A DNA stretch of 64,000 nucleotides, taken from the IMG/VR virus record IMGVR_UViG_3300046167_000825, positions 186,001 through 250,000 of that record; one strand, 5' to 3'. The notes under the pieces were generated by a model. That model saw only the letters and a program-made list of their open reading frames with translations, searched no databases and had not been told where the DNA came from. The position numbers and the translations under genes are program-made. This document shows positions 35,974 to 46,212 of this stretch, piece after piece (positions within the stretch are counted from its first letter, which is position 1; the number at the start of each line of letters is the position of its first letter).

Positions 35974-36657
35974 ATGAGGCTAACTATGACAACACTTGGG
36001 CTAGACCCCTCTCTCACGAACTTTGGCTGGTGCTTAATCGCTGACGATGGTTTTACTGTTATCGAGCGAGGTCGCTTTCAGACAAATGCAAAACAGATTT
36101 TCATTGAGAGGTATGTTTATCTTCGTGAGGAGTTGAGAAACCTCGTTAAAACACATAAGCCAGATTACATTGGTATCGAAAGCCCTATCTTCAATGACTT
36201 GTACTCAGAGGGGATGTATGGGCTTTTCTTATTTTGTAATGATGTGTTTCTTGTGGAAAAGCAAGATGCCGTTTTCTTCACGCCCCCACAAGTCAAGAGT
36301 CACGCTTTCGACTGTTTGGGTCGACCGAAAGGTTGGAAGATGAAGAAAGCCGATATGGTGGAAGCAAGCAAGAAGAAATCAAACACAAATGTCCGTTGGA
36401 ATCACAATGAAGCCGATGCCTACTGGGTGGGTGTTATAGCCCATCGCTTCTGGCAGTTCTACAAAAAAGAAATCACTCTCGATGACCTTTCAGTCAAAGA
36501 GAAACATCAGTTCGCAAGAAAGCATACTTACACACGAGGAAAGAAGGCTGGTAAAACCGAAGCCACTGGACTCATTTATCGTCAAAATGACCGATTTTTC
36601 ACATGGTCACAACAAGGAGCAAACACCCATGCCAAGAAAAGCAACAAAAAAACCTAA
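35974..36657 (+). CDS. ruvC: RuvC-like Holliday junction resolvase
   Basis: LGLDPSLTNFGW, IGIESP, FTPPQVK, HNEADA. Confidence 0.85.
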   Translation: MRLTMTTLGLDPSLTNFGWCLIADDGFTVIERGRFQTNAKQIFIERYVYLREELRNLVKTHKPDYIGIESPIFNDLYSEGMYGLFLFCNDVFLVEKQDAVFFTPPQVKSHAFDCLGRPKGWKMKKADMVEASKKKSNTNVRWNHNEADAYWVGVIAHRFWQFYKKEITLDDLSVKEKHQFARKHTYTRGKKAGKTEATGLIYRQNDRFFTWSQQGANTHAKKSNKKT

Positions 36658-37849
36658 CGCAAAGAAAATCACACCAGCAAGTGCCTTGTCCAAAGCAATG
36701 GGCAATATCACAAAGCACGGTCTTGATAGCAATGTTCAAGTCAAACTAGATTCCAAACGATTGAAAACCTCATTGGAACACATCCCAACGGGTGCTTTGG
36801 CAATCGACTATCTCATTGGAGGTCGTCCAAATCAATTCGGTGTTTCCCCATGCCCTGGCATCCCCAAAGGGCGTATCATGAACCTTTATGGACACGAGGG
36901 TAGTGGTAAGACAACCCTTGCTCTGACAACCGTAGCCCAAGTCTGTGCCACTGGTGGGACAGTTTGCTATATCGACTTTGAGAACGCCATCGTTCCCGAT
37001 TATGCTCAAGCATTGGGTGTTCCCATTGAGGATGAAAGCAAGTTCGTCCTTGTAGCCCCCGAAACCCTAGAAGATGGTCTGAAGATTATGTTCTTGATGA
37101 TCACAGAAGGTGTTGATCTCATTGTTATCGACTCTGTTGGTGCTGGAGTTCCGAAGATTGAGTTCAATAAGACGGGTAAAGACATTGAGAAACACGCAAA
37201 GGTCGGTGAGATCGCTCGTTTGTGGTCGGGTCACTTACCCAAGATTAAGCAGTTGGCTGCAAAGAATGACGTGACCATCATTGGGATATCCCAAATCCGA
37301 GATAAGATTGGTGGTATGGGCTACGGTGCAGATGCGACTACCACTGTTCAAGGTGGGAAGGCTTGGCGTTTCTATTCGGCACTGCGTATGCGTTTGAAAC
37401 GAGTTCAGACAGTGAAGGGAAAGGTTTACAATGCCATTGCGGGTAAGTACGAAGATCAAGCCATTGGTAGCAAGACCCGAGCGAAATTGGATAAATGCAA
37501 GGTTTCTAGTTCGCAAGGACAAGAGATTGACTTTCATCTTCGTCAAGGTGAGGGCATCGACAATGAATCTACAATGATTGACATTGCTATTGCCAATGGC
37601 ATTATCAAGAAATCGGGTTCTTGGATCACTTGGGTTCGTGCCGATGACTCAATCATTAAGGTACAAGGAGTTGAACGTATCCGAGAGCAGTTGAAGAACG
37701 ATGATGCTCTTTGTAACGAACTTTGGGAAATCTGTATCCCTATCCTCAGTGGCTCTATGGTTGATAGCACCGAAACTGAAGAAGAGGATAGCATTGACAA
37801 CTCTAACGAAGTCGATGTAGCCAAAGCCCTTGCAGATTTAGATAAGTAA
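36629..37849 (+). CDS. recA: RecA recombinase
   Basis: IPTG, YGHEGSGKTTL, YIDFENA, IVIDSV, SQIRDKIG, GGKAWRFYSALRM; AAGGAG RBS before ATG 36629. Confidence 0.95.
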   Translation: MPRKATKKPNAKKITPASALSKAMGNITKHGLDSNVQVKLDSKRLKTSLEHIPTGALAIDYLIGGRPNQFGVSPCPGIPKGRIMNLYGHEGSGKTTLALTTVAQVCATGGTVCYIDFENAIVPDYAQALGVPIEDESKFVLVAPETLEDGLKIMFLMITEGVDLIVIDSVGAGVPKIEFNKTGKDIEKHAKVGEIARLWSGHLPKIKQLAAKNDVTIIGISQIRDKIGGMGYGADATTTVQGGKAWRFYSALRMRLKRVQTVKGKVYNAIAGKYEDQAIGSKTRAKLDKCKVSSSQGQEIDFHLRQGEGIDNESTMIDIAIANGIIKKSGSWITWVRADDSIIKVQGVERIREQLKNDDALCNELWEICIPILSGSMVDSTETEEEDSIDNSNEVDVAKALADLDK

Positions 37850-37898: not shown

Positions 37899-39098
37899 AT
37901 GACAACCAAAGTAAAAATAAAAGACTTCCAAAGTATCGAAAAAGCCGATCTCGAAATCAGTGGTTTCACTGTTATCACTGGAAAGAACAATAGTGGCAAA
38001 AGTGCCGTCCAACGGGCGATACGGGGCGTGTTCCAAAATACAAGGGGACACGCCTTTGTTCGTCACGGAAAACCTCACAGTGAGGTTTCTGTTTCATTTG
38101 AGGATGGGAATGAGGTCACTTGGTTGAAAGGAAAGAAAGAAAACAAATATATCATCAATGGCAAAGAGTTCGATAAAGTGGGTTCTGGCACACCCGAAGA
38201 ACTAGATGACTTTATGGTGCAGCCCATAACGGCTGGTGGTCGGGAGATATGGTCGCAGTTCGCACCACAGTTCACGGGTCAAGTGTTCCTATTGAGTGAA
38301 ACTGGCTCAGTCCTAGCCGAAGCCATCTCCGATGTTGAGCGAGTTCAGACCCTCAATAATGCTATGAAGCAAAGCGAACGAGATAAACGATCAGCCAACA
38401 GTACTCTGAAGGTGCGTAAAAAAGACGAGAAAGCCCTCCAACAAGACCTAGAGCATTATGTCGGGCTAGAGGCTTTAGGATTGCTCCTAGATACCATAGA
38501 GAGGCTAGAGGAGAAAGTAGCAACCCTCACTAATCAAATTGCTACTCTTATTTCTTATCAGAATAAACGAGGTTCTTTGTTATCGGAGATATCTCTTTTG
38601 GATGGTGTCACCTCAATAACAATCCCTAACACGGATAAAGTGTCCTCTTTATCAGAGGGTCTTTCCTCGCTACTTGAACTAAGGGGCGAATATGCTGAGG
38701 CTTCTCAGACAGTGTCTTTTTTACAAGGCATCTCATCCGTGTATGTTCCAGATGAAGGTGATTTGCTCACACTGACAGCAACTTTGAAAACATTGTCGGA
38801 TTTACAGACAGATAGATTACGGGCTATGACTGGCACTAGAGTTATGTCTCAGATGTGTACCACCCTATCCAATGACCTTGTACCTCTCCATAAAGTGGAG
38901 TTCCTTTCAAAGACAGAGAACACACTAGAAACCCTAACCTCTTTGCATACCGAGAGGTCTATCAGTATCGAACTGCTAGAGGACTTGGAGAAGGATATCC
39001 AACAGAATAAACGGGATCAAGTGGCATTACAAAGACATTTGAAAGACCACATTCATGCTCAAGGCTCATGTCCTTTATGTGGTAGCACTGTATGTTAG
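37899..39098 (+). CDS. SbcC/Rad50-like ATPase, N-terminal half
   Basis: IKDFQS, ITGKNNSGKS Walker A, Q-loop, coiled coil ending in zinc hook CPLCG; no Walker B. Confidence 0.85.
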   Translation: MTTKVKIKDFQSIEKADLEISGFTVITGKNNSGKSAVQRAIRGVFQNTRGHAFVRHGKPHSEVSVSFEDGNEVTWLKGKKENKYIINGKEFDKVGSGTPEELDDFMVQPITAGGREIWSQFAPQFTGQVFLLSETGSVLAEAISDVERVQTLNNAMKQSERDKRSANSTLKVRKKDEKALQQDLEHYVGLEALGLLLDTIERLEEKVATLTNQIATLISYQNKRGSLLSEISLLDGVTSITIPNTDKVSSLSEGLSSLLELRGEYAEASQTVSFLQGISSVYVPDEGDLLTLTATLKTLSDLQTDRLRAMTGTRVMSQMCTTLSNDLVPLHKVEFLSKTENTLETLTSLHTERSISIELLEDLEKDIQQNKRDQVALQRHLKDHIHAQGSCPLCGSTVC

Positions 39099-39225: not shown

Positions 39226-40137
39226 ATGTTTGTGATAACAAATGCAAGGGTGTATAAACCCGTCAATCTCCGAAATGTCTTATCGCTATTCGATGGGATT
39301 TCTTGTGGTCAATTGGCTCTCAATCGCTTGGGGCTTTCTTACGGAACTTATTACGCTTCTGAAATAGATAAGACAGCCATATCCATCACTCAGTCGAACT
39401 TCCCAGAAACAGTTCAGTTGGGAGATGTTCAGAAAGTGGATTCCAAGAATCTTACAGACATCGATCTGATATTTGCTGGGTCACCATGTCAAGGCTTTTC
39501 AAAAGCGGGATACCGTCAGAACTTTGGTGACGAGAGATCAAAGTTGTTTTGGGAGTTCATTCGTTTGAAAGAAGAACTTAACCCCCGTTTTTTCTTGCTT
39601 GAAAATGTTGAGATGGATTCCTTTAGTGAGGGGGTCATCACAAAGACATTGGGAGTCACCCCCATCCGTATTGATTCCGTAGCCTTTTCAGCCCAACAAC
39701 GAAAACGGATCTATTGGACGAACCTCCCCGTTCGATTGTTGCCCGTAATTCCTTGCTCTGACACTTTGGGAGATGTCCTTGATATGAGTGCCTCACGAAA
39801 GTGGGTGAAGGTGTCCTCCATCAAAGGTTGGAGGTATGGTCGGAATTATCTTCAATATGATTTGACGGGAAAGGGTCATAACTCACAAGATCAGAGAGCC
39901 ACCTATCTCATTAAGAAATCCCCTACTGTTCTTCATAGCAATGGACACAGCAAAATTAAGTTCCTCAGAGAAGATGGTGAGATAGGGTTATTGACAGTGG
40001 AGGAGTTCGAGAAACTTCAAACACTTCCCCTACAGTATACAAATATACAAGGGGCTTCTGATGCCAAGAGGATTTCAGCCATTGGTAACGGTTGGACAGT
40101 GTCTGTGATTGCTCATTTGCTCTCGGGGATAAAATGA
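39226..40137 (+). CDS. dcm: C5 cytosine DNA methyltransferase
   Basis: VLSLFDGISCG (I), GSPCQGFS (IV), LLENV (VI), QQRKRIYW (VIII), ERLQT-like EKLQT (IX), IGNGW (X). Confidence 0.93.
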   Translation: MFVITNARVYKPVNLRNVLSLFDGISCGQLALNRLGLSYGTYYASEIDKTAISITQSNFPETVQLGDVQKVDSKNLTDIDLIFAGSPCQGFSKAGYRQNFGDERSKLFWEFIRLKEELNPRFFLLENVEMDSFSEGVITKTLGVTPIRIDSVAFSAQQRKRIYWTNLPVRLLPVIPCSDTLGDVLDMSASRKWVKVSSIKGWRYGRNYLQYDLTGKGHNSQDQRATYLIKKSPTVLHSNGHSKIKFLREDGEIGLLTVEEFEKLQTLPLQYTNIQGASDAKRISAIGNGWTVSVIAHLLSGIK

Positions 40138-41081
40138 ATATCCCCTATGCGATTATCAACACCGACCTAGATGGTTTTCTCTCTGGGTTGCTTCTCCACC
40201 ATTTTCTCGGGACAGAGATTGTGGGTTTCACTGACAGTGGTAAGACCGTTTGGAAAAGGGAGGGAGTCGCTTGGGAAGATTGTACTTTCATAGATATGTA
40301 TGTCGTACCCCCCAAGATAAAAACACTTTGCAACCACATGGTTGCTGTGGATGAAGACCACGCCAAAGAGTTGTTTTGGAACACCAACAAGAGAAATCCC
40401 AACCTAGAAATTGCCACGAGGTCATTCCTAGATTCTTATACCACCAAGTTCTCCCTTGCGACTGTCCATTACATCATTGCACTTCTTGAGCAGCATGATT
40501 ACCCAGTTCTAAAAGACCTCAATCTCCGAAATACCTCTATGGGTTATCGGTGTATTGATATCATTCTCCGTGCAGATGATGTGATGAATAACTCCGTTCA
40601 TGCCTATCGTGAGAACTGTCTTTTTTGGTGGGATAAAATGTACGAGATAGCCTCCGTGAATCTGCAAGGTTTGGTCACCAAATCTTTCATGAATTACACA
40701 GATGCTATTCATCGTGGAGATATTCGATTGGATGTTGAGAGATTCAAGAGGCTTTTTGCGAACTTCGTGAAGAATCGTTTTGGTTGTGATTCCCCAGATG
40801 GGGGATACAAGAATCTTGGCTTTGGTGACACAGCCATCGGGGATAATGCGGTGCGGTTTATCAGTTGGTTGTCAGAACTAACGGGCTTGAAAGGCTTTCC
40901 TCTCCACGAGAGTCTAGTTCGCTATGAGGGGGAAGCCCACCGAACTAATGTTTCCATTGAGGAACTTCAAGAAATCAAGGGTGGGACATACCGAGGACAG
41001 AAGTTATTCTCGTATGCGTTTGTGTGTCGTCCATCAAGCGAAAATCATTTCAGTTACACCATCAATTTGGAGAGAAAATGA
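40134..41081 (+). CDS. DHH-like phosphoesterase of unknown function
   Basis: NTDLDG, FID, NH at the DHH position, RADD; ATGA overlaps at both ends. Confidence 0.55.
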   Translation: MNIPYAIINTDLDGFLSGLLLHHFLGTEIVGFTDSGKTVWKREGVAWEDCTFIDMYVVPPKIKTLCNHMVAVDEDHAKELFWNTNKRNPNLEIATRSFLDSYTTKFSLATVHYIIALLEQHDYPVLKDLNLRNTSMGYRCIDIILRADDVMNNSVHAYRENCLFWWDKMYEIASVNLQGLVTKSFMNYTDAIHRGDIRLDVERFKRLFANFVKNRFGCDSPDGGYKNLGFGDTAIGDNAVRFISWLSELTGLKGFPLHESLVRYEGEAHRTNVSIEELQEIKGGTYRGQKLFSYAFVCRPSSENHFSYTINLERK

Positions 41082-41203
41082 TTATTACACGAGGCAAGGT
41101 TCGGAAGCCAATGCGTATTCTCATCGCTTGTGAATACGCTAGAAGTGAAACCTTTGACGGCATCGCCCAAGCGATGGCAGACCAATGGGGTTGGATTCCG
41201 TGA
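41078..41203 (+). pseudogene. internally deleted remnant of a phage methyltransferase-like gene
   Basis: 41 aa: MRILIACEY joined directly to ARSETFDGIAQAMADQWG, matching the remembered N- and C-termini of a common phage MTase-like family. Confidence 0.6.
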
Positions 41204-42148
41204 TTACTGTTTCCGTCAATAGAAAGGTTGAGCCGATACGGAATGTTCTCTCTTTGTTTGATGGGATTTCATGTGGGCAACTCGCACTCCAAAGAGCCAA
41301 AGTTCCCTATGAGAACTACTACGCTTCTGAGATAGAAGATGCCTCCATCAAGGTCACCCAAGAGAACTTCCCTAAGACAAGACAACTCGGTGATGTGACC
41401 AAGATAACGGATTTCCCAAAGGTGGATTTACTCATCGCTGGGTCACCGTGTCAAGGCTTTTCAAAATCTGGGAGCAAACTGAACTTCGATGACTCTCGAT
41501 CAGTTCTGTTTTTTGAGTTCTTACGGGTTCTGAAACTCACGAAACCGAAGTATTTCTTGCTTGAAAATGTCATTATGGATCAATGGGCTACCAATGTGAT
41601 TTCATATTTTTTGCGAACCAGCCCCTACGAACTGAACTCCTCTTTGGTTTCAGCCCAGAACCGTCCTCGATACTACTGGACAAATCTCCCACGCCCCTCC
41701 ATAACCGAAAAGAGTTTGTGCCTAGATGACATCGCTGGTCAAAGTTCCAAGAATCTCCTCTCGGATTCTTCTCTGGACTTCATTCCGTGTCCGTCTTCCA
41801 ACACAGATACGGGGTTGATTTTTGTAGGGGGGTTCAAGACACGGAATCAGACCATGTGGATAGAGAATGGCAAACTGTTATCACGGAACTTTCGACAAGG
41901 CTATCGTGTGTATTCGAGTAAAGGTAAGTCTAGCACTCTCACAGCCAGTGGTGGGGGTCTAGGGGGGTGCAGTGGCTTTGTACCAGTTCGGAGATGCGAT
42001 ACGCCCTTTGACACGATTGGAATGTGAAAGATTGCAGACCGTTCCCGACAACTACACCAAATCTATTTCTGAGGGTCAAGCCAAGAAAGCATTGGGGAAT
42101 GGCTTCACGGTAGATATGATTGCTGAGATTTTTAAGGGGTTGGTTTGA
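41200..42148 (+). pseudogene. dcm: second C5 cytosine methyltransferase with a +1 frameshift near 41977
   Basis: motifs I-VIII in frame; removing one T from GGCTTTGTAC restores GLYQFGDAIRPLTRLECERLQTVPDNYT...ALGNGFTVDMIAEIFKGLV* (motifs IX-X). Confidence 0.85.
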
Positions 42149-42165: not shown

Positions 42166-42181
42166 CGCATTGGAGGAAGAT

Positions 42182-43138
42182 ATGATTAAACTACTATGGC
42201 GAACTGATATACACATGAGTGACAAGACCCCCGTATCTCGAACAGATGATTGGAGGGCGACACTCACAAAAAAATTGAAGAAGGTGGGGGAACTAGCAAA
42301 GGACTTCGATGCCGTTCTCGATGGAGGTGATTTCTTTGATATCAAGTCCCCTACAAGGAACTCCCACTCTTTGGTGAGGGAGATGATTGATATTCATAAT
42401 GACTATCCCGTTCCCGTGTATGCCAATGTGGGCAACCACGATTGTGTCTATGGGGATTACACCTTTCTACACCAACAACCTCTTGGGGTTCTTTTTTCAA
42501 GTGGGTGCTTCAAGAGATTGTATGATGAACACGAGGTCATCTTCGAGAAGGATGGCTTGAAGGTTCGTGTGGTTGGTATCCCTTATCATGGTGTTCATTA
42601 TGATATGGAACGGTTCAAGAGTATCACCAAAGGGGATGAGGACTATCTTGTGTGTGTCGCCCATGTGCTTGCTTCTGAAAAGGGTGGCTCAATGTTTGAG
42701 GGGGAGGATATCGTCAAGTATTCTGACTTGGAGAACCTCGCCCCCGATGTGTGGTGCTTTGGACACTGGCACAAGGATCAAGGCATCACAGAGATTGCCC
42801 CAAACAAATGGGTTGTGAATATTGGTTCTATGACGAGAGGTTCGCTCACACAAGACAACATCGAACGGATACCTTATCTTGGTTCATTGTGTTTTGACGA
42901 GAATGGCATCCACTTGAAGAAAATCCCACTTGAAGTTCAGCCCTCAGAGGAAGTCTTTGACCTTGCGAAGAGAGAGAAAGAAGAAATCCGAGAGGACACA
43001 ATGACGACTTTCGTGGGTTCATTAAAGGAAAGCCTAGCCACTTGTAGCGAAACGGATTTGCGTGAGTCTGTGATGGCTTTGGAAATACCAAACTCCATCA
43101 AAGAGAGAGCCTTGTTGTATTTGGAGCAAGTGCAATAA
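42182..43138 (+). CDS. sbcD: SbcD/Mre11-like nuclease
   Basis: TDIH, GGDFFD, VGNHD, AH, GHWH, NIGS. Confidence 0.88.
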   Translation: MIKLLWRTDIHMSDKTPVSRTDDWRATLTKKLKKVGELAKDFDAVLDGGDFFDIKSPTRNSHSLVREMIDIHNDYPVPVYANVGNHDCVYGDYTFLHQQPLGVLFSSGCFKRLYDEHEVIFEKDGLKVRVVGIPYHGVHYDMERFKSITKGDEDYLVCVAHVLASEKGGSMFEGEDIVKYSDLENLAPDVWCFGHWHKDQGITEIAPNKWVVNIGSMTRGSLTQDNIERIPYLGSLCFDENGIHLKKIPLEVQPSEEVFDLAKREKEEIREDTMTTFVGSLKESLATCSETDLRESVMALEIPNSIKERALLYLEQVQ

Positions 43139-44437: not shown

Positions 44438-45583
44438 ATGAAAATGACTATTGCAAAAACAGACCTTGAAAAAGCCATCGGTATCACGGCTTATTCACTA
44501 GGCTCAGACGGCACAGCCGATTGGACGAAAAATTACTTCCTTCGTCAAACAGAGACTGGCATGGATGTTCACACCACCAACCATCGTTACTGCTCAAGTA
44601 CAAGTATAAACACTTGCACAGTCAATGGTGATATTGTGAATAGTTTCAATCTTCCAGCCTCCCGTTTCAAAGATATGTTCAACTACATGGAAAACAATGT
44701 GGTCACCTTGACTGTCAAAGACAGTATTGTGACTGTCCACAACAGTCGTGGGAATGTTCGTTTCCCGTGTAACAAGCAAGACTTCCCTTACTGGGATAAA
44801 TCGGTTTCGTCTGCAAAATCTATGTTGACCATCAAGGCAGAGGCATTGTACGAACTAATCAATCATCACAAAAAGTTTGTGGCAAAGCCAGATGCTAAAT
44901 CGGTTGTCTATCGCTATATCTCTTTTCAGAATGGTGGTGTCCTCAGTGGTGACGGTCTTAATATGTGTTTGACTGTTTCGGATGATTTGAATGATGCCGA
45001 CTTTTACTTGACCAAACTAGATGTCAATCCTTTGCTTGGCTTTTTGAAATCTTGTGACGGGGATATTGCTATCACCCATTGTGATAAAATGGTTTATTTC
45101 AAGTCGAACTCCGATGCCGTGTTCGGTATGGTGAAGCCCCCTAAACGAGTGTGTGCTGGTTTAACGGGTATTGATGTTGGGATGATGAAAAACAGCCTTA
45201 CAGATGTGTTAGCCGAGTGGTCTACCTCTAAAGCGAACTTGATTAACTCCTTTGGTATGCTTGGTTTCACTATGTCAGAGGACGACAAAGTGGTCAAGTT
45301 TGAGTTCAAGGACGGGTCACTGTTCTTTAATGGTCGTTCTATGGCTGGTGGTGTTGATACTCTTGAGGTAGGTTTGACAACCTTCAAAGATGACACAAAG
45401 GTGCTTGAAAATGCTTCCTACTTCAATCGAGAGGTCTTCACAAAGGTTCTGAAACTCATTGATGGGGATGATATCACTATCAAAACACTGAAGTCCTTGA
45501 ATAACTCACCCGTAGTAGATCACACTGTTTCGGGGTATTCCACCTATTCTTTGGTCGTTCCTATCCAATCTGCGAACTTTTAA
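44438..45583 (+). CDS. dnaN: DNA polymerase III beta-like sliding clamp
   Basis: 381 aa, three-domain pattern; MKMTIAKTDLEKAI, TTNHRY, QDFPYW, SLVVPI. Confidence 0.75.
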   Translation: MKMTIAKTDLEKAIGITAYSLGSDGTADWTKNYFLRQTETGMDVHTTNHRYCSSTSINTCTVNGDIVNSFNLPASRFKDMFNYMENNVVTLTVKDSIVTVHNSRGNVRFPCNKQDFPYWDKSVSSAKSMLTIKAEALYELINHHKKFVAKPDAKSVVYRYISFQNGGVLSGDGLNMCLTVSDDLNDADFYLTKLDVNPLLGFLKSCDGDIAITHCDKMVYFKSNSDAVFGMVKPPKRVCAGLTGIDVGMMKNSLTDVLAEWSTSKANLINSFGMLGFTMSEDDKVVKFEFKDGSLFFNGRSMAGGVDTLEVGLTTFKDDTKVLENASYFNREVFTKVLKLIDGDDITIKTLKSLNNSPVVDHTVSGYSTYSLVVPIQSANF

Positions 45584-46212
45584 TGTCTCAAGACCTCCGA
45601 AATAAATACCAAAAACTGGTAGGGAAACGAGATAGTCTACAAGATAGGCTATCTCAAATCCTTTCTCAAATCTCAAGTTTAGAGAACGAGATAGACACCC
45701 TAGATTATGTTTCTAGTGTGTTTCGCCAGTTATTGGATAGAGAGGTGGTCAGCAGTGTTCAAAGTGTTGAGAGGTTGCTCACAGAAGCCTTACAAGCCGT
45801 ATTCACAGACCAAGACTTAAAGGTTGAATCAGAGGTGGGTGAAAGTCGAGGGAAGGTTTCGGTTAATCTCACCACCGTGCAAGATCATGGTGGTGGGGTT
45901 ATTGTGGGGGGTGATACCACAGAAGGGTTTGGTGGTGCAGTTTGTACTGTTCAAAGTGCTATTCTCCGTATCTTTGTGACTCTCAACAGAGGTCTTCGTC
46001 CATTGTTATTGATGGATGAAAGTCTGCCCGCTTTCGATAACAACTATGTTCAGAATATGGGCAAGTTTTTATCTTTGTTATGTGAACGACTTGACCTAGA
46101 TATTTTATTGGTCACTCACAACCAATCTCTGGTGGACTCGGCAGACAGAGCCTATCGCATAGACAAGAAGAACGGTAAAGCCATTTTCACGGAGATAACT
46201 CATGCCAATTAG
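45583..46212 (+). CDS. SbcC/Rad50-like ATPase, C-terminal half
   Basis: short coiled coil, signature-like EGFGG, Walker B LLMDES, H-loop VTHN. Confidence 0.82.
   Translation: MSQDLRNKYQKLVGKRDSLQDRLSQILSQISSLENEIDTLDYVSSVFRQLLDREVVSSVQSVERLLTEALQAVFTDQDLKVESEVGESRGKVSVNLTTVQDHGGGVIVGGDTTEGFGGAVCTVQSAILRIFVTLNRGLRPLLLMDESLPAFDNNYVQNMGKFLSLLCERLDLDILLVTHNQSLVDSADRAYRIDKKNGKAIFTEITHAN

What the first reader, a model, noticed from the sequence alone, without database searches (positions are those of the whole stretch)
39226..42148. Translationally coupled DNA-modification cassette: MTase - DHH-like enzyme - collapsed MTase - MTase, between sbcC-N and sbcD
Seen: four ORFs linked by ATGA, ATGA and GTGA overlaps. 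The three MTase-related ORFs share an unusual leader before the catalytic start (MFVITNARVYKP, MIITRGKVRKP, VITVSVNRKVEP). The middle 315-aa protein has DHH-superfamily-like motifs (TDLDG, FID, NH, RADD) but not the canonical DHH. Established: phage orphan C5 MTases protect against restriction, and DHH proteins are phosphoesterases. Inference: an undescribed module in which a phosphoesterase acts with methyltransferases (further base modification, or removal of defence signals or nucleotides), with MTase copies turning over. The shared leader might be a docking peptide.
Basis: partly seen in the sequence, partly recalled or inferred. Interest (0 to 1): 0.65.

Follow-up and report, generated by a model that had tools for sequence, protein, structure and literature searches.

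The report
Phage methylase cassette with DHH-like enzyme
A marine jumbo phage carries cytosine DNA methylases translationally coupled to an uncharacterised, DHH-like phosphoesterase that in bacteria sits inside restriction-modification operons, so it looks like a new accessory enzyme of cytosine methylation whose job is still unknown.

Summary
Four + strand ORFs between the sbcC N-half and sbcD are joined by ATGA, ATGA and GTGA overlaps.

- **M1 (39226-40137)** and **M3 (41200-42148)** are paralogous C5 methylases.
- **The 41-aa ORF** is an in-frame 504-nt deletion remnant of a 209-aa small methylase (M2).
- **M3** looks frameshifted here, but the extra C at 41976 is absent from five other assemblies.

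The 315-aa protein X matches no Pfam, PHROG, NCBIfam or PADLOC model. It folds confidently (pLDDT 95.5), and all 18 top structural matches are DHH/DHHA1 enzymes (Z 5-7). D11, D13, D54 and H68 are invariant and D148 is 99% conserved in 110 homologues.

X is not phage-specific. In 23 of 46 bacterial species it lies beside a C5 methylase, often in an M-(C)-R-X operon with a HinP1I/MspI-like nuclease, and once it is fused to a methylase. Solitary copies are under purifying selection, and all 10 genomes tested held a C5 methylase elsewhere (45% background).

X is therefore a methylase-linked accessory phosphoesterase, probably not the restriction enzyme. Its substrate is unknown. The "docking leader" is better explained by paralogy and duplicated 5' ends.

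The parts
37899..39098 (+). SbcC/Rad50-type ATPase, N-terminal half (399 aa), ending at the zinc-hook CPLCG; the upstream border of the cassette
   Evidence: Matches AAA_15 at 8e-11, AAA_23 and SMC_N, and phrog_16465 exonuclease at 1e-28. Sequence.
39226..40137 (+). M1: orphan C5 cytosine DNA methylase, 303 aa, with a 13-residue N-terminal leader
   Evidence: PF00145 at 4e-38 and phrog_116 at 3e-55. Motifs I, IV, VI, VIII and X are present. The target-recognition region differs between relatives.
40134..41081 (+). X: 315-aa divergent DHH/DHHA1-fold phosphoesterase; its start overlaps M1's stop (ATGA)
   Evidence: No hit in Pfam, PHROGs, NCBIfam or PADLOC. Model pLDDT 95.5. The 18 best VIA matches are all DHH-family chains, Z 4.8-6.9. 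D11, D13, G14, D54 and H68 are invariant in 110 homologues. dN/dS is 0.07-0.11 between phage copies.
41078..41203 (+). M2 remnant: 41-aa relic of a 209-aa phrog_757-type small methylase, with an in-frame 504-nt internal deletion
   Evidence: Equals nt 1-63 plus nt 568-630 of the intact gene in L008 and L059. The intact gene matches phrog_757 at 2e-60. The remnant is present unchanged in contigs of four runs.
41200..42148 (+). M3: C5 cytosine DNA methylase, a paralogue of M1 (43% identity). It reads as two frames here because of one extra C at 41976; without that base it is 315 aa
   Evidence: PF00145 at 8e-31 (N part) and 4e-9 (C part). All four runs lack the base. It is intact at 315-320 aa in relatives.
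42170..43138 (+). SbcD/Mre11-type metallophosphoesterase, the downstream border. The likely true start is the ATG at 42182, which gives 318 aa as in relatives
   Evidence: Metallophos at 3e-13 and phrog_100 SbcD-like. Relatives are 318 aa.
45583..46212 (+). Candidate C-terminal half of the split SbcC (209 aa). Context only, not part of the cassette
   Evidence: Weak SMC_N match to the C-terminal end of the profile, E 1.3e-3. The same 209-aa gene sits in the same place in relatives.

Best explanation
The cassette looks like a restriction-less, phage-borne version of a bacterial cytosine-methylase module, carried in a marine jumbo phage (a 289-kb record).

M1 and M3 are active orphan C5 methylases; a further one lies outside the window. 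They presumably methylate the phage genome so that host type II restriction enzymes cannot cut it. M2 is a dead relic.

X is co-translated with them. It is a very divergent DHH/DHHA1-fold, two-metal phosphoesterase whose architecture (DHH domain, helical insert, small DHHA1-like domain) is closest to RecJ, GAN and Cdc45-type exonucleases.

In Bacteroidota and some Bacillota the same protein is a companion of C5 methylases. It sits in M-(C)-R-X or M-X-R operons, in M+X pairs, fused to a methylase, or alone in genomes that keep C5 methylases elsewhere.

My reading is that X is not the restriction nuclease. It is an accessory enzyme that handles a DNA-level consequence of cytosine-5 methylation, most likely exonucleolytic processing of nicked, mismatched or otherwise damaged methylated DNA. 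That would make it a damage-control role comparable in logic to Vsr or Mig.

Shown: the gene structure, the fold class, the conserved metal-ligand-like residues, the linkage to methylases, and purifying selection. Inferred: catalytic activity, DNA as the substrate, and the damage-control role.
For: - Structure of the locus.
- Fold: pLDDT 95.5 and pTM 0.93. All 18 best of 48,161 chains are DHH-family (RecJ2 Z 6.9, PAP phosphatase 6.7, RecJ 6.2, Cdc45 6.2, GAN 5.8). The weak Foldseek rows in PDB and BFVD name the same family.
- Active-site-like residues: D11, D13, G14, D54 and H68 are 100% and D148 is 99% conserved in 110 sequences. The family consensus at motif III is D-Q-H.
- Linkage: 23 of 46 species loci carry a PF00145 methylase next to X, and 2 carry an N6 methylase. 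P0161 is an N6_N4 methylase-X fusion.
- Another nuclease is already present: R3 folds like HinP1I and MspI and follows a C protein. R7 matches PADLOC REase_II at 5e-57 and Pfam MTaX1.
- M+X pairs nest inside the M+R3+X clade, which indicates loss of R.
- Solitary X copies are interspersed in the X tree and have dN/dS of 0.07-0.16.
- 10 of 10 solo-X genomes have a C5 methylase elsewhere, against 55 of 121 Bacteroidota.
- In phages X is the constant element between the sbcC N-half and sbcD, while the methylases vary.
Against: - No sequence-level membership in DHH: Pfam gave no hit. hhalign against NrnA and RecJ aligns only motif I, at 2% probability. The structural Z scores are middling.
- No activity or substrate is known.
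- One phage relative (L007) has X with no adjacent methylase.
- Vsr is present in 5 of 10 X-bearing genomes, once 2.3 kb from the module, so X is not simply a Vsr replacement.
- In R3 systems X starts right after R's stop, which would also fit a role in restriction itself.
- One fusion homologue (P0093) lies in a defence island.
- Co-folding X with M1 gave no answer.
Confidence: 0.45

Rival explanations
1. X is part of the cutting arm. Either it is itself a methylation-sensitive nuclease, or it is an end-trimming enhancer that makes cuts by the neighbouring restriction enzyme irreparable. In the phage it would degrade unmethylated host DNA while the phage's own DNA is protected by M1 and M3.
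For: - X is translationally coupled to R3 (its start directly follows R3's stop) and overlaps R7.
- It lies behind the C protein together with R.
- M+X two-gene modules are flanked by housekeeping genes.
- A methylase-X fusion resembles fused R-M enzymes.
- P0093 lies in a defence island.
- 9 of 10 solo-X genomes hold a 44-61% identical relative of the X-linked methylase elsewhere.
Against: - The triads already contain a HinP1I/MspI-like nuclease or a REase_II-type protein.
- At least 12 loci have X with no methylase or nuclease nearby and with both flanks sequenced. These copies are under purifying selection.
- M+X pairs arise by loss of R while X is kept.
- From my own knowledge, no DHH-fold enzyme is known to cut double-stranded DNA internally.
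- L007 has X without an adjacent methylase.
Confidence: 0.2
2. X acts on small nucleotides, not on DNA. It would be a NrnA or pAp-phosphatase-like enzyme that clears short oligonucleotides or methylated mononucleotides such as 5-methyl-dCMP, or degrades cyclic signalling nucleotides.
For: - Its size and two-domain plan equal those of NrnA, PAP phosphatase, PggH, DhhP and TmPDE, which are among the structural matches.
- Correlation with genomic C5 methylases would also be expected for a scavenger of methylated nucleotides.
- Solitary conserved copies fit a housekeeping-like enzyme.
Against: - The genomes tested already have canonical NrnA and RecJ.
- Fusion to a DNA methylase and position inside R-M operons point to DNA.
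- The helical insert resembles the RecJ2, GAN and Cdc45 type rather than NrnA.
- Bacterial R-M operons are an odd place for an anti-signalling enzyme.
- No PADLOC or PHROG anti-defence match.
Confidence: 0.2
3. In the phage, X is simply a recombination exonuclease of the RuvC-RecA-SbcCD-Cas4-like operon, a RecJ analogue. The methylases are unrelated insertions into a permissive spot.
For: - X keeps the same position between the sbcC N-half and sbcD in all six related phage contigs, including L007, which has no methylase there.
- Neighbouring genes are RuvC-like, RecA, SbcD and a PD-(D/E)XK nuclease.
Against: The bacterial homologues' association with methylases is independent of any recombination operon and is far above chance. 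The start-stop overlaps tie X to M1 and M2.
Confidence: 0.08

Closest known systems
DHH/DHHA1 phosphoesterase superfamily (RecJ, archaeal RecJ2/GAN/Cdc45, NrnA, PAP phosphatase)
   Same: Two-domain plan with a DxD right after strand 1, a second Asp after the next core strand, an invariant His after a third, and a small C-terminal domain carrying a DGG(Y/F) motif. All best structural matches belong to this superfamily.
   Different: No Pfam DHH or DHHA1 hit, and only 2% profile-profile probability. Motif III is D-Q-H in most members and C-N-H in the phage, not DHH. There is a long helical insert. The family-specific invariant residues P89, K105, N161 and W165 have no counterpart that I could map. 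The gene context (R-M operons) is unlike any DHH enzyme I know of.
Vsr (very short patch repair endonuclease) and Mig-type T/G glycosylases as accessory genes of C5 methylases
   Same: X has the same kind of distribution: inside C5 R-M operons, paired with a lone C5 methylase, or elsewhere in genomes that have C5 methylases. That Vsr and Mig accompany C5 methylases is from my own knowledge.
   Different: Unrelated fold, and no PF03852 match. Vsr co-occurs with X in 5 of 10 genomes, so there is no complementary distribution. X is usually coupled to R rather than to M in the R3 systems.
Type II restriction-modification systems with C protein (M-C-R), HinP1I/MspI type
   Same: The bacterial relatives of the module have a C5 methylase, an HTH controller protein and a PD-(D/E)XK-like nuclease whose best structural matches are HinP1I and MspI.
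   Different: They carry X as an extra conserved gene. The phage cassette has methylases and X but no nuclease gene.
Multi-methylase anti-restriction loci of phages (orphan C5 methylases)
   Same: Several orphan C5 methylases with different target-recognition regions, gained and lost between relatives.
   Different: A conserved non-methylase enzyme is the constant core of the locus and is translationally coupled to the methylases.

Membership tests
DHH superfamily (Pfam PF01368 DHH + PF02272 DHHA1) | Significant match to the family profiles | tested here: not met
   No Pfam hit at E <= 0.01. hhalign of a 110-sequence X profile against NrnA and RecJ alignments gave 2% probability, with only motif I aligned. 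The PDB sequence search gave no DHH hit.
DHH superfamily | DHH + DHHA1 two-domain fold | tested here: met
   The 18 best of 48,161 chains are all DHH-family, with Z 4.8-6.9 and 143-206 residues aligned (one row, 7d62_B, aligns only 103). Foldseek PDB, BFVD and Atlas list the same family at weak scores. The Z values are middling, so this is fold-class evidence only.
DHH superfamily | Motif I DxD and motif II D (metal ligands) | tested here: met
   D11, D13 and G14 directly follow strand 5-9, and D54 follows strand 50-53. All are 100% conserved in 110 homologues. hhalign places the X motif on the NrnA and RecJ DxD.
DHH superfamily | Motif III D-H-H | tested here: inconclusive
   H68 is invariant. 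The two preceding residues are D-Q in about 70-75% of the family and C-N in the phage clade. Only one His is conserved.
DHH superfamily | Motif IV Asp and the DHHA1 GGGH substrate motif | tested here: inconclusive
   D148 (99%) and D222-G223-G-(Y/F) are candidates by order along the chain. I had no coordinates to check their geometry.
DHH superfamily | Mn2+/Mg2+-dependent phosphoesterase activity | not testable with these tools
   Needs enzyme assays.
C5 cytosine DNA methylase (PF00145): M1 and M3 | Profile match and motifs I (FxGxG), IV (PCQ), VI (ENV), VIII (QxRxR), X (GNG) | tested here: met
   M3's motif X lies in another frame only because of the extra base at 41976.
Complete type II restriction-modification system (phage cassette) | A restriction nuclease gene next to the methylase | tested here: not met
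   Between the sbcC N-half and sbcD there are only M1, X, the M2 relic and M3. The bacterial R3 and R7 families were not found among the cassette's ORFs.
Restriction endonuclease (X itself) | Always accompanied by a cognate methylase; toxic without it | tested here: inconclusive
   At least 12 loci with both flanks sequenced have no adjacent methylase, and X there is under purifying selection. However, all 10 such genomes tested have C5 methylases elsewhere. Toxicity was not testable.
Vsr family (PF03852) | Profile match, or failing that a complementary distribution with Vsr | tested here: not met
   X has no Pfam hit. Vsr is present in 5 of 10 X-bearing genomes and absent from the phage record.

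The most novel reading that the evidence does not exclude
X founds a third kind of dedicated companion enzyme of cytosine-5 DNA methylation, after Vsr and Mig. It would be a DHH-fold nuclease that travels with C5 methylases through bacterial R-M operons and phage anti-restriction cassettes, and that repairs or processes methylation-derived DNA lesions. Even more unusually, it could be the first DHH-fold nuclease acting in restriction.
Probability: 0.3. Interest if true: 0.75.

Novelty: new variant of a known kind. Interest (0 to 1): 0.58.

Why it matters
Type II restriction-modification systems are usually thought of as methylase plus nuclease, sometimes with a controller or Vsr. Here a conserved enzyme family turns out to be a regular extra gene of such operons. 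It has about 490 clusters at 50% identity and no model in Pfam, PHROGs, NCBIfam or PADLOC.

The family survives loss of the nuclease and even of the adjacent methylase. It is also the stable core of a multi-methylase locus in a widespread marine jumbo phage.

If it processes DNA in a methylation-linked way, it would add a component to the biology of 5-methylcytosine in bacteria and phages, and possibly a new enzyme tool. The hypothesis is directly testable in culturable hosts such as Chryseobacterium, Kaistella and Prevotella.

Tried and rejected
- **Cultured phages:** megablast of the locus and tblastn of X against 50,697 phage records found nothing. No cultured relative is available.
- **Family libraries:** Pfam, PHROGs, NCBIfam and PADLOC have no model for X.
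- **PDB sequence search with the X profile:** only a chance plectin hit.
- **X and R3 as paralogues:** rejected; hhalign probability 0.4%.
- **The C-terminal 300 aa of fusion P0093 as an R3-like domain:** rejected.
- **The Atlas neighbour cluster named DUF4435 (the PARIS AriB Toprim nuclease family):** treated as a lead only. The name is automatic and no Pfam family is common in that cluster. No Toprim chain appears among the 50 best PDB matches. The DxD sits after strand 1, as in DHH.
- **Vsr-replacement idea:** no complementary distribution.
- **Leader as a general N-terminal signal:** a motif scan of all 8,039 candidate starts in the 289-kb genome found it only on M1 and M3, plus two unconvincing hits. 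The scan skipped ORFs under 60 aa, so the 41-aa M2 relic was not covered.
- **Leader as a docking peptide:** co-folding X with M1 gave "no answer" (score 0.01), which is neither support nor evidence against.
- **M3 as a pseudogene or programmed frameshift:** rejected in favour of an error or rare variant in this record.
- **Literature:** searches for MTaX1, for DHH with restriction-modification, and for DUF4435 found no description of this family. The search is limited to the held library.
Full report
**Where the window lies.** The window is bases 186001-250000 of a 289-kb linear IMG/VR virus record that is estimated to be 66% complete. It is a jumbo phage. Near-identical DNA occurs in seawater and marine metagenomes from more than twenty studies. 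GC content is about 0.44 and even across the locus. No cultured phage in a 50,697-record collection resembles the locus or the central protein.

**Checking the observation.** The sequence shows four + strand ORFs joined by ATGA (40134-40137), ATGA (41078-41081) and GTGA (41200-41203).
- **M1 (39226-40137, 303 aa)** and **M3 (from 41200)** match PF00145 and phrog_116. They share 43% identity and all C5 motifs.
- **The 41-aa ORF** is the first 63 nt plus the last 63 nt of a 630-nt gene that is intact in related phages, where it matches phrog_757 at 2e-60. It is therefore an in-frame 504-nt deletion that removed the catalytic core.
- **The flanks** are an SbcC-type ATPase N-half that ends at the zinc hook, and an SbcD-type phosphoesterase. 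A candidate SbcC C-half follows 6 kb downstream.
- **The frameshift in M3.** The cause is one extra C at 41976. The 99.94% identical contig L056 lacks it. So do contigs of four runs from four studies, two of which may be the source samples. I take it as an assembly error or rare variant, so M3 is a normal 315-aa gene. The M2 relic, by contrast, is present in all of these assemblies.

**What the central protein X is.** X (40134-41081, 315 aa) has no match in Pfam, PHROGs, NCBIfam or PADLOC.
- **Family size.** A word search found 23 relatives. A profile search of 1.84 billion representatives found 487 clusters, 101 of them below 1e-30.
- **Fold.** With the 23-sequence alignment AlphaFold gave a very confident model, pLDDT 95.5 and pTM 0.93. 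In an all-against-48,161-chain structural search, the 18 best matches are all DHH-superfamily proteins: RecJ2, PAP phosphatase, an uncharacterised Helicobacter protein, RecJ, Cdc45, GAN, PggH, DhhP, exopolyphosphatase and TmPDE. Their Z scores are 4.8-6.9. Foldseek against PDB and BFVD, and the Atlas shape search, give the same family at weak scores.
- **Conserved residues.** In 110 full-length homologues D11, D13, G14, D54, H68, P89, K105, N161 and W165 are invariant and D148 is 99% conserved. Most members read D-Q-H where the phage reads C-N-H. Along the predicted strands these residues sit where DHH motifs I, II and III sit.
- **Limits.** At the sequence level membership is not demonstrable. 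hhalign aligns only motif I, at 2% probability.

**Neighbourhoods in phages.** Five related phage contigs keep X (52-87% identical) at the same place between the sbcC N-half and sbcD, while the methylases change:
- M1-X-M2-M3 in L008, L009, L059 and L060.
- M1-X-truncated M2-M3 in L057.
- M0-M1-X-M3 in L058.
- X followed by an unknown 172-aa gene, with no methylase, in L007.

The M1 slot carries at least three different target-recognition regions. X evolves under strong purifying selection, with dN/dS of 0.07-0.11. Methylase turnover around a constant X is thus confirmed.

**Neighbourhoods in bacteria.** A scan of one genome per species returned 46 loci. Most are Bacteroidota, with a few Bacillota, Chlorobiota, Chloroflexota and Pseudomonadota.
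- **Methylases.** Profile searches of their ORFs show a C5 methylase beside X in 23 loci and an N6 methylase in 2.
- **R3.** Eleven of the 46, plus three loci from other assemblies, also carry a conserved ~300-aa protein, R3, directly upstream of X. X's start often follows R3's stop immediately. R3 has no family match. Its model (pLDDT 86.8) finds HinP1I and MspI as the best hits in both structural searches, followed by Hjc and other PD-(D/E)XK nucleases. Its invariant D98 ... S112-x-K114 fits the HinP1I/MspI variant of the PD-(D/E)XK motif; that comparison is from my own knowledge.
- **C protein.** In four loci an HTH controller protein precedes R3.
- **R7.** Five loci instead carry R7, which matches PADLOC REase_II at 5e-57 and Pfam MTaX1. 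One paper describes MTaX1 as possibly discriminating modified DNA (PMC10853773).
- **Consequence.** The bacterial modules are M-(C)-R-X or M-X-R operons in which a nuclease is already present.
- **M+X pairs.** Two-gene M+X modules flanked by housekeeping genes have methylases that nest within the M+R3 clade, so they arose by loss of R.
- **Fusions.** One homologue is fused to an N6_N4 methylase and stands alone among sugar-metabolism genes. Another is fused to an unknown domain in a defence island.

**Solitary copies.** About a dozen loci with both flanks sequenced have X among unrelated housekeeping genes.
- These copies are scattered through the X tree next to R-M-linked ones.
- Some are syntenic across species, and they have dN/dS of 0.07-0.16. 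They are functional genes, not decaying relics.
- All ten solo-X genomes tested have at least one C5 methylase elsewhere. Nine of them have a full-length 44-61% identical relative of the X-linked methylase.
- The background is 55 of 121 sampled Bacteroidota genomes. At that rate the chance of ten out of ten is about 4e-4. This is not corrected for phylogeny or genome quality.
- These genomes also have normal RecJ and NrnA, so X does not replace them.

**How it most likely works.** The shown facts are these:
- X has a DHH-class fold and conserved metal-ligand-like residues.
- It is tightly co-expressed with methylases and nucleases.
- It has been fused to a methylase.
- It persists and is conserved without an adjacent nuclease or methylase.
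- It is restricted to genomes with C5 methylases.

The best fit is an accessory phosphoesterase tied to cytosine-5 methylation and acting on DNA. The helical insert between the two domains resembles the RecJ2, GAN and Cdc45 type, which are nucleic-acid exonucleases. I therefore favour exonucleolytic processing of nicked, mismatched or damaged methylated DNA, a damage-control role in the spirit of Vsr or Mig. Its position in the phage's recombination and repair operon is compatible with this. That step is inference.

Arguments against:
- Vsr co-occurs with X in 5 of 10 genomes.
- X is coupled to R rather than to M in the R3 systems.
- No substrate is known.

Rivals:
- A role in cutting itself, as a methylation-sensitive nuclease or an end-trimming enhancer. 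This is weakened by the conserved solitary copies and by the presence of R3 or R7.
- A small-nucleotide hydrolase.
- A plain recombination exonuclease in the phage.

**The leader.** The N-terminal peptides are real and conserved in relatives. In the whole 289-kb genome they occur only on the cassette's methylases (the scan did not cover ORFs under 60 aa, so the M2 relic was not included).
- M0, M1 and M3 are paralogues, so they share the leader by descent.
- M2 belongs to another family and has an internal Met (MRIL...) after the leader.
- In L058, which lacks M2, the M3 leader is a hybrid of the M2 and M3 leaders. This suggests that the leaders are duplicated 5' ends at which cassettes are inserted or lost.
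- Co-folding X with M1 gave no verdict. The docking-peptide idea remains untested rather than refuted, but it is no longer needed to explain the similarity.

**Comparison with what is known, and novelty.**
- M1 and M3 are ordinary orphan C5 methylases, and multi-methylase phage loci are known.
- The bacterial relatives are ordinary C-controlled type II systems, apart from X.
- X resembles DHH enzymes in fold but fails profile membership.
- X resembles Vsr and Mig in distribution but not in fold, and its distribution is not complementary to Vsr.
- I found no description of the family in the held literature, and no library has a model for it.

I rate it a new variant of a known kind: a new, very divergent DHH-class family with a new, consistent association. 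Its mechanism is unresolved.

**Constraints.** No step had to be referred.

Noticed in passing
window 37899-39098 and 45583-46212: SbcC appears split at the zinc hook. The N-half ends in CPLCG, and a 209-aa ORF 6.5 kb downstream (after sbcD, a PD-(D/E)XK nuclease and a 381-aa gene) weakly matches the C-terminal end of SMC_N. Related phages have the same layout.
   Followed up: partly
window 41976: One extra C splits M3 into two frames in this record only. L056 and contigs of four runs from four studies lack it.
   Followed up: yes
G000:C1:267023-268156 (outside the window): A further, larger C5 methylase (408-aa open frame, PF00145 at 3e-64) is in the same phage record. No Vsr match was found in the record.
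   Followed up: partly
L058:6948-6990 compared with L059:4267-4300 and L059:4893-4930: In the relative that lacks M2, the M3 leader (MITHALNRKVEP) is a hybrid of the M2 leader (MIITHA...) and the M3 leader (...NRKVEP). It looks as if M2 was lost or gained by recombination between duplicated leaders.
   Followed up: partly
L005:5077-5982, L002:7014-7952 and 10 other loci (alignment A3): A conserved ~300-aa bacterial protein with no family model folds like the restriction enzymes HinP1I and MspI and follows a C protein. It is probably an undescribed restriction enzyme family in Bacteroidota.
   Followed up: partly
L032:5938-7956 and L042:4284-6320: Two X genes lie in tandem behind R3 in two Bacteroidales/Prevotella loci. 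In L032 the two copies fall in different branches of the X tree. Only one of the two L042 copies was actually placed in that tree.
   Followed up: no
L074:5001-6866 (P0093): X fused to an unknown 300-aa C-terminal domain sits in a defence island, beside a NERD/UvrD-like helicase, a reverse transcriptase and an RloB/AAA_21 pair.
   Followed up: no
L012:2973-3428, L021:5532-5951, L026:5516-5962, L027:2904-3323: In four Flavobacteriales loci, solitary X is preceded by a conserved 140-150-aa protein with no match in Pfam, NCBIfam or PADLOC.
   Followed up: partly
window 36482-37849: The RecA-like ORF is 455 aa from its first ATG and overlaps the RuvC-like ORF by 176 nt. Relatives are 401-408 aa, so the true start is probably the ATG near 36629.
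   Followed up: no
G003:C1:914706-914918 (L023 locus, about 2.3 kb upstream of X): A Vsr-like frame with an internal TAG lies close to the M-R3-X module of Kaistella rhinocerotis.
   Followed up: no
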